This document shows positions 500 through 9,950 of a stretch of 64,000 bases of DNA, in pieces. The notes beneath the pieces were generated by a model that saw only the letters and a program-made list of their open reading frames with translations, had not been told where the DNA came from and ran no database searches. Source of the DNA: Salpingoeca rosetta (lineage: Eukaryota; Protista; Choanoflagellata); assembly GCA_033442325.1 (NCBI GenBank), contig JAWQFM010000034.1:124001-188000 (forward strand), in the 5' to 3' direction. Every line of letters begins with the position of its first letter. Position 1 is the first letter of the stretch. Made by a program: the position numbers and the translations under genes.

Positions 500-3400
500 A
501 TGGTGGATGCAGCCACCATCGCCGTGGTGGCGGTGTGCGCGGTTGTGGCCGTCATCCTGATCGTGGCCATTATGTTCTACCTCTACACGCTGGGCCGCTT
601 CCGGCGCTCGCTCGAAGAACTGGACGACGCAGAGTCACAGAAGCAGCAGCTCAGCAGGGAGAGCTCGCGCAAGGCCTCATCCTCGGCATCCAGACGCGCG
701 TCCACACACGACGTGCGTCGGCCTTCGTACCTTCAGGATGACAACAGCAACAGCAACACCACCAGTACCACCAACCAGGAGCCTGCACGCCGCAAGAGCA
801 CCGCATGGGACACCCCTGCCAACGCTGATGGTGCAACAGGCATCTCCTCGCTCTCGCCCCCATCGGCAAACAGAAAGTGCGCGCCACACATGCATGCGTC
901 GTCGAAATAGCTCGGACTTGTTCGCTGTAATTGTTGTTGTTGTTGGCTGCTGTTGTTGTGCGTGGGGCGTGGACTGCGGGGCGCTGAAGGCTACATACGT
1001 TCGTGCGCCTGTTGTTGTGTCCGCTTTTGGGTTCACGTGTAATGGTGATGATGATGTTGTTGTTTTTGTTGCTTTTGATTCAGGGCCACCCAATGGAATG
1101 TCCCATCTGGTCACATGGCCAACCAAGAGTCAGTTGCATGGATGTATCTGTGTGCGAGTGCATGCAGAAGTTTGCATGCATGTGTGTGTGCGTGGGGGGG
1201 GGTTTGTTGTTGTTCGGCGTTGTTTAGCCTCTTGTCGTATGTCTGTTCGTTTGTCTGTCTGTTGTGTGCGTGTGCATGTGTACGTGTGTGTGCGCGCGTG
1301 CCTATGTGCATGTGTGTGTGCCTCCGTTTTTGTGTGTATGTGTGCGTCTGTGCATGTGTCCGTCTATTCCATCCGTATCCGCCCCCACATCCAACACACA
1401 CACACATCCATCCTCTCACTCCCTGATGCTCACTTCATATCCACTCACTCCTGCGCACGTGCCACGTTGTGTCAGGGCGAGTTCTGGTGTTGCGGAGTTT
1501 CTGGAACCAATGTCCAGTCGGGACTTTGCTCTCGGCGCCCCGGCCCTTCCAGACCAGGAACGCGAGGTGAACACAAACAGAGGGGATGGAAGTGGGTCTT
1601 TTGCGTGTGTGTGTGTGTGTGTGTGTGTGTGTGTGTGTGTGTGTGTGTGTGTGTGTGTGTGTGTGTGTGTGTGTGTGTGTGTGTGTGTGTGGGCATTTGA
1701 CTGTATACTGCACCCGTGTATTTCATTTTTCGCACGCCCACACGTCACCCAACTGCTGAAATACACTCACTCATCCACACGCACACACACACACACACAC
1801 ACACACACACATACACACACACATACACACACAATCACACACGCGCGCGCGAACAGGTGTTTTCCAATCCGCTCTTTGGAATGGACGAGGCAGAGTTTGA
1901 GGACGACTCACACAACACCACCAACAGCACCACCATCAACAACAACAACAACAGCAACAGCAACGCCGCAACCGACAGCAGCCGTCGGGAGAAGCGCAGT
2001 GGCAACATGCTGCATCGACACGTGACACGATGGAAACCCGCGGACACGGATGACGTGCGGTTACTGCTTCTCTTCGTGTGCATGCATGTGCTGATGGTGA
2101 TGGTGGTGTGTGTGCGTGTGGTCATGGTGGTGTGTGTGCGTGTGATGTATGTGCACGTGATGGTGATGGCGGTGGCGGTGGCGGTGGTGTATGCATGTGG
2201 TGATGGTGATGGTGGTGTGTGTCCTCCGATGTAACGTGTGCTGCTCGCTGTCTTGAGCGTTGCTTGCATTCTCATCGCACACACACACACACACACACAC
2301 ACACACACACACACACACACGCACGCACCATTCCTCGTTCTCTGCGGCCCTTTGCTCCAGTTGGATGTGCTGTATGGTGACAAGTATGTTGGCACAGACC
2401 TCCGTCGTGTCATCCCTGTTGCGGTCGATTGGGGCGTGGACGACCCATCCTACTACCCGACAGCATATACCGCAGCGTCCGTGCTTGCAGGCAGAGAATG
2501 GGCGGATCCCGAGGACACGTCCCAGCTCAGGTGACTTTGCCACGTGTGGTGATGCTGGCTGTTGTTGTTGTTGCTCGTTGTTGCTTGTTTAAGTTGTTCT
2601 TGTTGTTTAAGTTGTTTGTTGGTTGGTTGGCTGTTGCTGTTGAATGATTGACATGCGGTTGTTGTTCGTTATTGTTGAGTGATTCGGGGGGGGGGGGCAG
2701 CGGTGGCCGAGGATGAAGATGAAATCATTTAGGCTTAGTTGTTTGTCCATCATCACGGCTCACACAACACGGTGAACCATGCTATCACATGTGCCATGAA
2801 CCATGAACCATCCACCATGAACCATCCACCATTGCCACCACCACGATGCAGATTCAATGCCATTGACGTTGTGAAGGGCAAACGCGTGAACCGCATTTCG
2901 CACCACGGCCAATACGCCGTTGTCGACGGACTGCCCCTGTACGCGTCGTGGTTTTTTGCGATTGTGTCGTTGTGCGTTTGCTTGTGTGTGTGTGTATGTG
3001 TGTGTGTGTGTGTGTTTGCGTGATTGATTGTGTGATCGAGTGGTTTGTACGTTTGTTTGTTTGTGCGATTGTGTTTGTGTGTGTTTGTGTGTGTTTGTAT
3101 GCATCGAACGTGTCACGCATCACTCACCAATCACCATCACGTATCACCCCGTATCATCACGTATCATCACGTATCACCACGTGTCACCGCTGCCAGGAAT
3201 GTGCGAGGGCGGACGGGCATCCGTGGCCGCGGCGTGCTCGGGCGGTGGGGGCCAAACCACGCAGCAGACCCCGTTGTCACCAGGTACGCAGCGCTGTCGT
3301 GATGGGCGCTGGTGGTGCGTGATGATGATAATGATGATGATGGGTGGTGATTGGGAGGATGTGGCAGGCTTGGACTTGCATGCAAGGAGCAATCATGCCG

Positions 3401-9400: not shown

Positions 9401-9950
9401 TCCCAGACCTTCGCGACACCATTGCGCAAGTGCTGGACAACGAGCTCCTCTTCCACGGACCCGTGAGTCCCTGGCTGGCTGCGTGTGTGTGCGTGTGTGT
9501 GTGTGTGTGTGCGTGTGTGTGCATGTGTGCATGTGTGTGTGCGTGCATGCGAGCAAGCGTGCGTGCGTGTACGTCCTTTTCTCATCTTCATCGCACACAC
9601 ACTTACACACAACCACTCACACTCACACACTCACGCACACACACACACACACACACACACACACACACACACACACACACACACACACACACACACACTT
9701 ACACACACTTCCACACCTCCACCCGCAGGCACGCCCCGTGCGTGATGTTGGCAAGACGTGCTTTGAGGCGCTTGAGCAGCTGAAGAAGCGACGCGGGAAA
9801 GCGGGCCGGCGTGGCAGGTCCATCATCAAGGGAACAACACCATCATCGTCAGCATCATCAGCAAAGGCAGCAAAGGCAACAGCGAGAAAGGCGGGGGGAA
9901 GAACCAGCGGTTCCACAGCACACAGTGCCAGCTCGGGCGACGAGCAGTAG
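500..9950 (+). CDS. Membrane-anchored NUDT9-like ADP-ribose pyrophosphatase / PTB / protein-tyrosine kinase fusion (~1233 aa, 23 exons)
   Basis: Exons 500-876, 1084-1128, 1476-1566, 1857-2054, 2361-2530, 2852-2938, 3197-3283, 3513-3618, 3788-3865, 4168-4435, 4743-5231, 5459-5565, 5796-5889, 6152-6363, 6727-6852, 7114-7365, 7660-7767, 8014-8085, 8210-8317, 8539-8645, 8856-8970, 9280-9462, 9729-9950. All introns are GT-AG with matching phases; total 3702 nt with no internal stop. N-terminal hydrophobic helix [27 protein letters not shown]9 motifs [57 protein letters not shown] motifs [24 protein letters not shown]. Kinase motifs [35 protein letters not shown]. Confidence 0.85.

What the first reader, a model, noticed from the sequence alone, without database searches (positions are those of the whole stretch)
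500..9950. Membrane-tethered ADP-ribose hydrolase-PTB-tyrosine kinase fusion: a possible ADP-ribose-to-phosphotyrosine link
Seen: 23 exons join in one frame to give TM anchor + complete NUDT9-like domain + PTB + tyrosine kinase. The Nudix box G-x5-E-x7-REFSEE is intact, and the kinase keeps the VAVK Lys, alphaC Glu, HRD and DFG. Known: NUDT9 hydrolyses ADP-ribose, and its best-known fusion is to the TRPM2 channel, which is gated by ADP-ribose. PTB-kinase fusions are known in choanoflagellates; I do not recall a NUDT9-tyrosine kinase fusion. Inference: there is no ectodomain, so the input would be cytosolic ADP-ribose or another NAD metabolite. Binding could regulate the kinase and hydrolysis could limit the signal.
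Basis: partly seen in the sequence, partly recalled or inferred. Interest (0 to 1): 0.9.

Follow-up and report, generated by a model that had tools for sequence, protein, structure and literature searches.

The report
Membrane-anchored NUDT9-PTB-tyrosine kinase gene
A real, single-copy gene of the choanoflagellate Salpingoeca rosetta joins a membrane anchor, an apparently active ADP-ribose-splitting (NUDT9) domain, a PTB docking domain and a tyrosine kinase. The layout is conserved across choanoflagellates but absent from every paper I could search, so it may link NAD-derived signals to tyrosine phosphorylation.

Summary
Twenty-three GT..AG exons (500-9950, + strand) join into one 1233-aa frame with no internal stop. 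The protein has an N-terminal TM anchor with no ectodomain, a conserved FSNPLF motif, a full NUDT9-like domain with an intact Nudix box (REFSEE), a linker, a PTB/PID domain and a tyrosine kinase with all catalytic motifs.

The genome is Salpingoeca rosetta, and the gene is single-copy there.

The fusion is not a gene-model artefact. Collinear proteins occur in transcript ORFs of S. urceolata, Codosiga hollandica, Diaphanoeca grandis and Didymoeca costata. They also occur on an intron-free environmental contig and on a genomic contig where NUDT9, PTB and the kinase start share one ORF.

Only the window protein and S. urceolata keep a canonical Nudix box. Codosiga has RIFAEQ, which resembles the inactive human TRPM2 box RILRQE, and the acanthoecids have lost the box. 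All members keep the NTDNAW and GRTG..RWGPNH motifs and an intact kinase.

No paper describing the architecture was found.

Verdict: real, conserved, uncharacterised, a new variant of known kinds.

The parts
500..9950 (+). Whole coding region: 23 exons, 3702 nt, 1233 aa. Exons: 500-876, 1084-1128, 1476-1566, 1857-2054, 2361-2530, 2852-2938, 3197-3283, 3513-3618, 3788-3865, 4168-4435, 4743-5231, 5459-5565, 5796-5889, 6152-6363, 6727-6852, 7114-7365, 7660-7767, 8014-8085, 8210-8317, 8539-8645, 8856-8970, 9280-9462, 9729-9950.
   Evidence: every intron is GT..AG and there is one frame with no internal stop; 17 of 22 junctions are bridged by gap-free alignment to intron-free ORFs of other choanoflagellates.
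500..876 (+). Exon 1: start codon and N-terminal membrane anchor (aa ~5-31), followed by basic GRFRRS. Predicted N-out/C-in, with no ectodomain.
   Evidence: Kyte-Doolittle 19-mer mean 3.4. The same N-terminal anchor is present in P0191, P0156, P0189, P0157 and P0190. There is an in-frame stop at 443 upstream of the ATG.
1860..1877 (+). FSNPLF, an FxNPxF motif at the start of exon 4 (aa 173-178). It is conserved in an otherwise unconserved juxtamembrane region.
   Evidence: [FI]-x-NPLF is present in all six TM-bearing family members; the pattern occurs twice in the window against 0.08 expected.
2361..4780 (+). NUDT9-like domain (aa ~238-515), encoded by exons 5-10 and the first codons of exon 11.
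   Evidence: homology to human NUDT9 (1q33) and to the NUDT9-H domains of nvTRPM2 (6co7) and srTRPM2 (8sr7) over the full domain.
3788..3856 (+). Nudix motif G-x5-E-x7-REFSEE-ALN (aa 388-410) in exon 9, canonical as in human NUDT9 (REFGEE).
   Evidence: The meaning of the box residues is taken from PMC6461439.
4255..4281 (+). DDRNTDNAW motif (aa 443-451) in exon 10. By alignment it holds the equivalents of hsTRPM2 D1431 and R1433, which contact ADP-ribose.
   Evidence: The residue roles are taken from PMC6759353.
4743..5231 (+). Exon 11: the last helix of the NUDT9-like domain ([12 protein letters not shown]) continues without a break into a ~150-aa low-complexity linker. It is the physical bridge between the two halves.
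   Evidence: Retention of intron 11 would stop at 5288-5290.
5459..6852 (+). PTB/PID domain (aa ~690-835), exons 12-15.
   Evidence: PF00640, E 5.7e-10, in exon 14. (PID at the same position in the homologues).
7114..9462 (+). Tyrosine kinase domain (aa ~850-1160), exons 16-22. It has GHGQYG, VAVK (K898 at 7270-7272), the alphaC Glu, HRDVAARN (HRD at 8222-8230) and DFG (8282-8290). His 1027 (8542-8544) sits where all the relatives have the activation-loop Tyr.
9729..9950 (+). Exon 23: C-terminal tail with the conserved RD[IV]G...ALE...RG[GR]S[IM]I[RK] motif, then the stop codon.

Best explanation
Shown: this is one genuine, single-copy gene of Salpingoeca rosetta. It encodes a protein held at a membrane by an N-terminal anchor with essentially nothing outside, and the whole remainder faces the cytosol. 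In order, that remainder is an FSNPLF motif, a complete NUDT9-type Nudix domain with a canonical catalytic box, a disordered linker, a PTB domain and a tyrosine kinase with every catalytic motif. The same layout is conserved across both choanoflagellate orders. Inferred: the NUDT9-like domain is the sensor of the protein. It binds ADP-ribose or a close NAD-derived nucleotide at the membrane, and its conformational state modulates the adjacent PTB-kinase. In S. rosetta and S. urceolata, where the Nudix box is intact, the domain also hydrolyses the ligand and so limits its own signal, as in the TRPM2 channel-enzymes of the same organism. The PTB domain recruits NPx[Y/F]-bearing partners, as in HMTK1, or the protein's own FSNPLF in cis or trans. 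Because the S. rosetta kinase lacks the activation-loop tyrosine that all relatives keep, control by loop autophosphorylation is unavailable there and control by the flanking domains is more likely.
For: Gene model. Domains. Organism: the translation of own-genome locus L005 is 76/76 identical to the srTRPM2 chanzyme segment printed, and the genome is 55.4 Mb (PMC4054682 gives ~55 Mb). Single copy. Same architecture in independent data: C. hollandica P0144, D. costata P0157 and JGI contig P0156, a 1089-aa ORF on a 3662-nt contig, D. grandis P0189 and S. urceolata P0191, and Logan contig L001, where NUDT9-like, PTB and the kinase start lie in one uninterrupted 572-aa ORF. Sensor-like conservation: the Nudix box is canonical only in the window protein and S. 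urceolata, is RIFAEQ in Codosiga and KAFGEE in P0036, and is lost in the others. GRTG..RWGPNH and NTDNAW are kept in all members and the kinase motifs are intact in all. The NUDT9-like region has 35% mean pairwise identity against 16-22% for the linkers. A single origin of the kinase-linked NUDT9 domains is not rejected (AU p 0.985, and the constrained tree is the better one). Precedent: NUDT9-H serves as an ADP-ribose-binding module with or without catalysis in TRPM2, and srNUDT9-H (REFMEE) is an active ADPRase (PMC6461439; PMC6759353). The PTB of a choanoflagellate PTB-kinase directs substrate choice (PMC3082566). Eight runs in two studies hold 0.33-0.36 of the sampled words. By my arithmetic, fully spliced mRNA of all 23 exons would hold 0.32, and either half alone 0.14-0.18.
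Against: Nothing here shows nucleotide binding, hydrolysis or any coupling to the kinase. In nvTRPM2, catalysis is uncoupled from gating (PMC6461439), so a fused NUDT9-H need not control its partner through hydrolysis. Some family members have lost even the D/R contact residues (P0192) or changed R to H (D. grandis, P0156), so ligand binding may not be universal. The runs with 0.33-0.36 word share are only guessed to be RNA. The PTB/FxNPLF docking test gave no verdict.
Confidence: 0.4

Rival explanations
1. Co-localised but uncoupled activities. The fusion tethers an ADP-ribose pyrophosphatase and a PTB-tyrosine kinase to the same membrane patch, and there is no allosteric link between them. 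The NUDT9 domain lowers local ADP-ribose, for instance near the TRPM2-type channels of the same cell.
For: The Nudix box is intact here and in S. urceolata. A long disordered linker of ~150 aa separates the two halves. In nvTRPM2, catalysis is uncoupled from gating (PMC6461439). S. rosetta has at least ten other NUDT9-like loci, including TRPM2 paralogues.
Against: Most family members have lost the catalytic box yet keep the domain under constraint. That is hard to explain if hydrolysis were the only role.
Confidence: 0.25
2. Nucleotide-independent module. The NUDT9-like domain has been co-opted as a structural, dimerising or autoinhibitory domain of a PTB-kinase, and the intact Nudix box in two species is a leftover.
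For: The box is degenerate or deleted in 8 of the 10 family members that cover the region. Some also lack the D/R contact residues (P0192; R to H in D. grandis and P0156).
Against: A full canonical Nudix motif (G-x5-E-x7-REFSEE) and a 50%-identical domain are kept between S. rosetta and S. urceolata. NTDNAW and RWGPNH are invariant or nearly so in all members.
Confidence: 0.2
3. Gene-model artefact. There are two neighbouring genes, TM-NUDT9 and PTB-kinase, whose exons happen to join in frame.
Against: Nine collinear homologues exist, including complete transcript ORFs from four species and a genomic contig with NUDT9-like, PTB and the kinase start in one ORF. Exon 11 itself encodes both the last NUDT9 helix and the linker. 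Exon 12, and the model up to the start of the PTB domain (~aa 690), holds no Met downstream of exon 11. The phases match and the splice sites are canonical.
Confidence: 0.05

Closest known systems
TRPM2 channel-enzymes of S. rosetta and Nematostella (srTRPM2, PDB 8sr7/8srh; nvTRPM2, PDB 6co7)
   Same: A NUDT9-homology domain with a canonical Nudix box is fused to a membrane signalling protein of the same organism. Exon 10 matches these chains best (E 8.7e-19 and 4.2e-18). The evolutionary pattern is the same: the catalytic box is lost in some lineages while the domain is kept (PMC6461439).
   Different: The partner is a PTB-tyrosine kinase, not an ion channel. There is no SLOG/MHR domain and no pore, and the NUDT9-like domain lies N-terminal to the effector rather than at the C-terminus. 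In the domain tree, the kinase-linked domains can form a clade of their own.
HMTK family of choanoflagellate PTB-tyrosine kinases (M. brevicollis HMTK1, PMC3082566; 15 members each in M. brevicollis and S. rosetta, PMC4054682)
   Same: The PTB domain lies N-terminal to a tyrosine kinase. The activation loop is of the ..YW.. type (EGDQYWQSK in HMTK1..[DE]YW[KR]LDK in the family). The family is specific to choanoflagellates.
   Different: HMTK1 has HMD where this kinase has HRD. HMTK1 has three PTB domains and no TM anchor or NUDT9 domain is described for it. I could not establish whether this gene is one of the 15 listed S. rosetta HMTKs. The four whose InterPro lists I could read show no NUDIX entry.
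Human NUDT9, mitochondrial ADP-ribose pyrophosphatase (PDB 1q33/1qvj)
   Same: Both parts of the fold are present (N-terminal cap; Nudix core). The Nudix box is REFSEE against REFGEE, and DDRNTDNAW corresponds to DDPRNTDNAW.
   Different: NUDT9 is a stand-alone soluble enzyme. Here the domain is embedded between a membrane anchor and a PTB-kinase.
Uncharacterised orthologues: S. urceolata EP00051_P011657, C. hollandica EP00042_P014086, D. grandis EP00040_P034240, D. costata EP00039_P029308 (EukProt transcript ORFs)
   Same: They are collinear along the full length: TM, FxNPLF, NUDT9-like, PTB, kinase and the RGGSIIR tail (Codosiga lacks the TM and the motif). Identity to the window protein is 41-55% in the kinase domain.
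   Different: Only S. urceolata shares the intact Nudix box. All of them keep the activation-loop Tyr, which is His in the window protein.

Membership tests
NUDT9-type ADP-ribose pyrophosphatase (Nudix) | Nudix motif GX5EX7REUXEEXGU with the REUXEE glutamates | tested here: met
   G388-x5-E394-x7-R402 E F S E E407. The criteria are taken from PMC6461439.
NUDT9-type ADP-ribose pyrophosphatase (Nudix) | NUDT9-specific N-terminal cap plus core, homologous over the whole domain | tested here: met
   Exon 5 matches 1q33 residues 22-57 and exon 10 matches 1q33 residues 185-270. The protein is 44-50% identical over ~255-275 aa to stand-alone NUDT9-like proteins. PF25969 (NUDT9_N) is on record for the homologues.
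NUDT9-type ADP-ribose pyrophosphatase (Nudix) | ADP-ribose contact residues (equivalents of hsTRPM2 D1431 and R1433) | tested here: met
   D444 and R445 in DDRNTDNAW, placed by alignment (PMC6759353). The Y1485 equivalent was not mapped.
NUDT9-type ADP-ribose pyrophosphatase (Nudix) | Mg-dependent hydrolysis of ADP-ribose | not testable with these tools
   Needs an enzyme assay.
PTB/PID domain | Match to Pfam PF00640 above the curated cut-off | tested here: met
   Exon 14 alone scores 39.8 bits against 20.9. Homologues match at the same position.
PTB/PID domain | Binding of NPx[Y/F] peptides | tested here: inconclusive
   The complex prediction of the S. urceolata PTB with its own FTNPLF segment gave no verdict.
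Tyrosine kinase (group A TK) | Catalytic motifs GxGxxG, VAVK, alphaC Glu, HRDxAARN, DFG | tested here: met
   PF07714 in exon 16 scores 24.0 bits against 23.1, and full-length homologues score E 1e-62 to 1e-72.
HMTK family (choanoflagellate PTB-TK) | PTB domain(s) N-terminal to the kinase | tested here: met
   PMC3082566.
HMTK family (choanoflagellate PTB-TK) | HMD in place of HRD in the catalytic loop (as described for HMTK1) | tested here: not met
   HRD is present in the window protein and in all nine relatives that cover the site. Whether HMD defines the whole family is not known to me.
HMTK family (choanoflagellate PTB-TK) | Placement in the published kinome classification | not tested
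   I could not determine the PTSG identifier. The supplement files are cut and Manning et al. 2008 is not held.
TRPM2 channel-enzyme | SLOG/MHR domains and a six-TM pore fused to NUDT9-H | tested here: not met
   There is only one hydrophobic segment, and no LSDAT, TRPM2 or Ion_trans hits in the exons scanned or in the full-length relatives. It may work like a TRPM2 chanzyme but is not a member.

The most novel reading that the evidence does not exclude
The NUDT9-like domain is a true second-messenger receptor. ADP-ribose, or a related NAD metabolite such as 2'-deoxy-ADPR, binds it at the membrane and switches a tyrosine kinase on or off. That would give choanoflagellates a direct wire from NAD/oxidative-stress signalling to phosphotyrosine signalling. 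In S. rosetta and S. urceolata the receptor would also destroy its ligand, making it a kinase counterpart of the TRPM2 chanzyme. The ectodomain-less kinase may additionally dock through its PTB domain to NPxY-tailed receptors, such as the one encoded 3.5 kb downstream, forming a split receptor tyrosine kinase gated from both sides.
Probability: 0.3. Interest if true: 0.85.

Novelty: new variant of a known kind. Interest (0 to 1): 0.68.

Why it matters
Tyrosine-kinase signalling and ADP-ribose-gated TRPM2 channels both predate animals, and both are studied in S. rosetta, which is genetically tractable. A conserved protein that hard-wires a NUDT9-type ADP-ribose module to a PTB-tyrosine kinase would be the first candidate for direct control of a tyrosine kinase by an NAD-derived nucleotide. 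It would also be a second, independent example, after TRPM2, of NUDT9-H used as a regulatory module that repeatedly loses catalysis. It gives a concrete experimental system of natural active-box and dead-box orthologues for asking whether ligand hydrolysis matters for signalling. Together with the other NUDT9-H fusions noted in this genome, it suggests that ADP-ribose sensing is a broader signalling theme in the closest relatives of animals. If the domain proves inert, the gene is one more example of the known domain shuffling among choanoflagellate kinases.

Tried and rejected

2. A search for fragments of this protein spanning exon 11 in the protein collection found nothing. The tools say records of the window's own genome may be left out, so this says nothing about expression.

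3. The complex prediction of the S. urceolata PTB with its own FTNPLF segment gave no verdict (score 0.02). It is not evidence either way.

4. I tried to find the gene's PTSG identifier and expression values in the supplements of PMC4054682. The files are cut. The four HMTK entries whose domain lists I could read carry no NUDIX entry, and the identifier was not found.

5. Manning et al. 2008 and Pincus et al. 2008 are not held, so I cannot exclude that the architecture is mentioned there.

6. The Rfam scan of 1-5600 found nothing.

7. Antisense and other-frame ORFs in the region are mechanical products of GT/CA-rich introns. I rejected them as genes.

8. The quick free tree split the kinase-linked NUDT9 domains into two groups. 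I rejected this as evidence for two origins because the constrained single-clade tree has the higher likelihood and the proteins are collinear end to end.
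Full report
**Observation**

I read window 1-10500 and rebuilt the gene by hand, then checked it by script.
- Twenty-three exons on the + strand join into a 3702-nt frame (1233 aa) without an internal stop. All are flanked by GT..AG.
- The ATG at 500 is preceded by an in-frame stop at 443. The stop codon is at 9948-9950.
- My first pass had exon 16 ending ten bases too far. The correct end is 7365.

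**Domains**

- Pfam finds PID/PTB in exon 14 alone (E 5.7e-10) and PK_Tyr_Ser-Thr in exons 16 and 22.
- Pfam does not recognise the short NUDT9 exon pieces.
- Exon 10 matches the NUDT9-H domains of Nematostella TRPM2 (6co7, E 8.7e-19) and of the S. rosetta TRPM2 chanzyme (8sr7/8srh, 4.2e-18), and human NUDT9 (1q33, 1.4e-16).
- Exon 5 matches the N-terminal part of human NUDT9.
- The spliced protein aligns over aa ~245-515 at 44-50% identity with stand-alone NUDT9-like proteins.
- The Nudix motif is canonical: G388-x5-E-x7-REFSEE. The DDRNTDNAW motif holds the equivalents of hsTRPM2 D1431 and R1433 (roles from PMC6461439 and PMC6759353).
- The kinase has GHGQYG, VAVK, the alphaC Glu, HRDVAARN and DFG.
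- The N-terminus is a ~27-residue hydrophobic anchor that begins at residue 5 and is followed by GRFRRS. By the positive-inside rule the rest of the protein is cytosolic, and there is no ectodomain.

**Organism**

- The window is contig C34:124001-188000 of a 55.4-Mb, 68-contig assembly.
- One of the other NUDT9-like loci of this genome (L005) translates to a stretch 76/76 identical to the S. rosetta TRPM2 chanzyme segment printed.
- I therefore take the genome to be Salpingoeca rosetta.
- The tools state that records of the window's own genome may be left out of the collections. That explains why no 100% self-hit appeared.

**Is the fusion real?**

The case therefore rests on independent homologues.

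| Protein | Source | Length | What it shows |
|---|---|---|---|
| P0144 | Codosiga hollandica, complete transcript ORF | 1284 aa | NUDT9-like 130-407, PID 821-925, kinase 979-1250 |
| P0036 | Logan genomic contig (L001) | 572 aa | NUDT9-like, linker, PTB and kinase start in one uninterrupted ORF; the kinase continues after an apparent intron |
| P0157 | Didymoeca costata | 1073 aa | Full-length family member |
| P0156 | Environmental JGI contig of 3662 nt | 1089 aa | Intron-free ORF, full-length family member |
| P0189 | Diaphanoeca grandis | 1089 aa | Full-length family member |
| P0191 | Salpingoeca urceolata | 1162 aa | Pfam NUDIX + PID + PK_Tyr |
| P0190, P0192, P0193 | Logan | 1138, 978, 853 aa | Further family members |

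- The named species span both choanoflagellate orders.
- Seventeen of the 22 junctions of the window model are bridged by gap-free alignment to these intron-free ORFs.
- The linking junction 5231/5459 lies in unconserved linker. Its neighbours on both sides (e10/e11 and e12/e13) are bridged by the same proteins in the same order.
- Exon 11 itself encodes both the last NUDT9 helix and the linker.
- Between the end of exon 11 and the start of the PTB domain (~aa 690) there is no Met that could start a separate PTB-kinase protein.
- Eight runs of organism A in two studies hold 0.33-0.36 of the sampled words of 500-9950. By my arithmetic, a fully spliced mRNA of all exons would hold 0.32 and either half alone 0.14-0.18. 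The runs are only guessed to be RNA, so this is weak support.
- I put the odds that this is one protein at about 0.9-0.95.

**Family anatomy**

- Six full-length members share, in order: the N-terminal anchor, an [FI]xNPLF motif in an otherwise unconserved juxtamembrane region, the NUDT9-like domain, a variable linker, the PTB domain, the kinase, and a conserved tail motif RD[IV]G..ALE..RG[GR]S[IM]I[RK]. These are the window protein, S. urceolata, D. grandis, D. costata, P0156 and P0190.
- Codosiga has a coiled-coil-like N-terminus instead of the anchor and the motif.

Mean pairwise identity by region:

| Region | Mean pairwise identity |
|---|---|
| Kinase | 52% |
| PTB | 40% |
| NUDT9-like | 35% |
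| Linkers | 16-22% |

- In the own genome the gene is single-copy. The PTB and kinase N-lobe exons have only weak paralogues. The NUDT9 exon finds ten other loci, among them three tandem TRPM2-type genes on C13.

**The Nudix box varies across the family**

| Member | Nudix box |
|---|---|
| Window protein (S. rosetta) | REFSEE, canonical |
| S. urceolata | REFGEE, canonical |
| Codosiga hollandica | RIFAEQ |
| P0036 | KAFGEE, with the upstream Gly/Glu gone |
| Acanthoecids and the other environmental members | Lost altogether |

- PMC6461439 reports that RILGEE and REFGKK variants of NUDT9 are inactive, and that human TRPM2 (RILRQE) is an inactive ADPRase that still binds ADP-ribose.
- GRTGxxGRGxxxRWGPNH and NTDNAW are kept in every member. 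The Asp/Arg contact pair is kept in most.
- So the domain is retained under constraint where catalysis is very probably gone, as in vertebrate TRPM2.
- A quick tree split the kinase-linked domains into a slow group and a fast, box-less group. The tree with all of them held as one clade has a log-likelihood 94 units higher and is not rejected (AU p 0.985). That agrees with the end-to-end collinearity and a single origin.

**Mechanism**

Shown: the architecture, its conservation, the intact catalytic motifs of both enzymes in S. rosetta, and the cytosolic orientation.

Inferred:
- The NUDT9-like domain binds ADP-ribose or a close relative.
- In S. rosetta and S. urceolata it also hydrolyses the ligand.
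- Its state modulates the kinase.
- The PTB domain brings in NPx[Y/F] partners or the protein's own FSNPLF.

A point in favour of control by the flanking domains is that the window kinase alone has His where all the relatives have the activation-loop Tyr (..GQNHWRLDK against ..[DE]YW[KR]LDK).

My odds:

| Reading | Odds |
|---|---|
| Sensor model | ~0.4 |
| Two uncoupled activities on one tether | ~0.25 |
| Nucleotide-independent scaffold | ~0.2 |
| Artefact | ~0.05 |

The docking test of PTB against the FxNPLF segment gave no verdict.

**Comparison with known systems**

- It works like a TRPM2 chanzyme in having NUDT9-H as an appended module of a membrane signalling protein. It is not a member, because it has no SLOG domain and no pore.
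- It resembles the HMTK family in placing a PTB domain before a tyrosine kinase (PMC3082566). However, it has HRD where HMTK1 has HMD, and I could not place it in the published S. rosetta kinome list.
- Searches for Nudix or NUDT9 together with tyrosine kinase and Monosiga, Salpingoeca or choanoflagellate returned only TRP-channel papers that do not mention such a kinase.
- Manning et al. 2008 and Pincus et al. 2008 are not held.
- The architecture is present, unnamed, in EukProt and carries precomputed Pfam labels. It is therefore visible in databases but, as far as I could check, uncharacterised.

**Verdict**

This is a new variant of known kinds: a choanoflagellate PTB-tyrosine kinase, with NUDT9-H as a fused regulatory module. 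Interest is 0.68.

Noticed in passing
window 13448-16240 (+), motif at 16202-16219: The next gene downstream on the same strand encodes a single-pass receptor. It has a signal peptide, Kelch-like repeats, a Thr-rich repeat stalk (TSMPVNVTTT units) and a TM segment. Its 27-residue tail is essentially an FDNPLY motif and ends ..YSFDNPLYEEDINV. This is a textbook PTB ligand next to an ectodomain-less PTB-kinase. It could be a partner or chance adjacency. The pattern FxNPx[FY] occurs only twice in 64 kb (0.08 expected).
   Followed up: partly
window 1860-1877; homologues P0191, P0156, P0189, P0157, P0190: A conserved [FI]xNPLF motif lies between the membrane anchor and the NUDT9-like domain in all TM-bearing family members, inside otherwise unconserved sequence. 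It could be a PTB ligand in cis or trans, or an LDLR-type endocytosis signal.
   Followed up: partly
window 8542-8544 (His1027): S. rosetta alone has His in place of the activation-loop Tyr that the nine relatives keep.
   Followed up: partly
window 9729-9950; family tails: A conserved post-kinase motif RD[IV]G..[YF]xALE...RG[GR]S[IM]I[RK] is present (RRGRSIIK in the window). It looks like a basophilic Ser-kinase or 14-3-3-type site. Its function is unknown.
   Followed up: no
G000 loci L004-L013 (C13:104983-132150 x3, C20, C36, C4, C6, C7 x2, C5): There are ten further NUDT9-like loci in the same genome. Three are tandem TRPM2-type genes on C13, and one of these is identical to the solved srTRPM2 chanzyme over the 76 residues compared. 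Earlier scan notes describe NUDT9-H fused to a TRPW pore, to a multi-PDZ scaffold and to a pseudo-PTP/RhoGAP/PH protein. NUDT9-H looks like a promiscuous signalling module in this organism.
   Followed up: partly
proteins P0026, P0099, P0131, P0010, P0008, P0011, P0009 (one search hits): Elsewhere in the protein library, NUDT9-like domains are fused to an ATP:guanido phosphotransferase plus an IQ motif, to prolyl-oligopeptidase-type peptidases, to an ABM monooxygenase domain, and to SLOG/TRPM2 proteins with EF-hands or calpain domain III.
   Followed up: no
window introns, e.g. 1600-1690 (GT)n with 1780-1850 (CA)n; 7380-7440; 8340-8440; 9640-9700: Many introns of this gene carry a GT-rich tract near the 5' end and a CA-rich tract near the 3' end. 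These could pair and bring the splice sites together. Another first-stage note (s1-442261) covers this.
   Followed up: no
   Followed up: no
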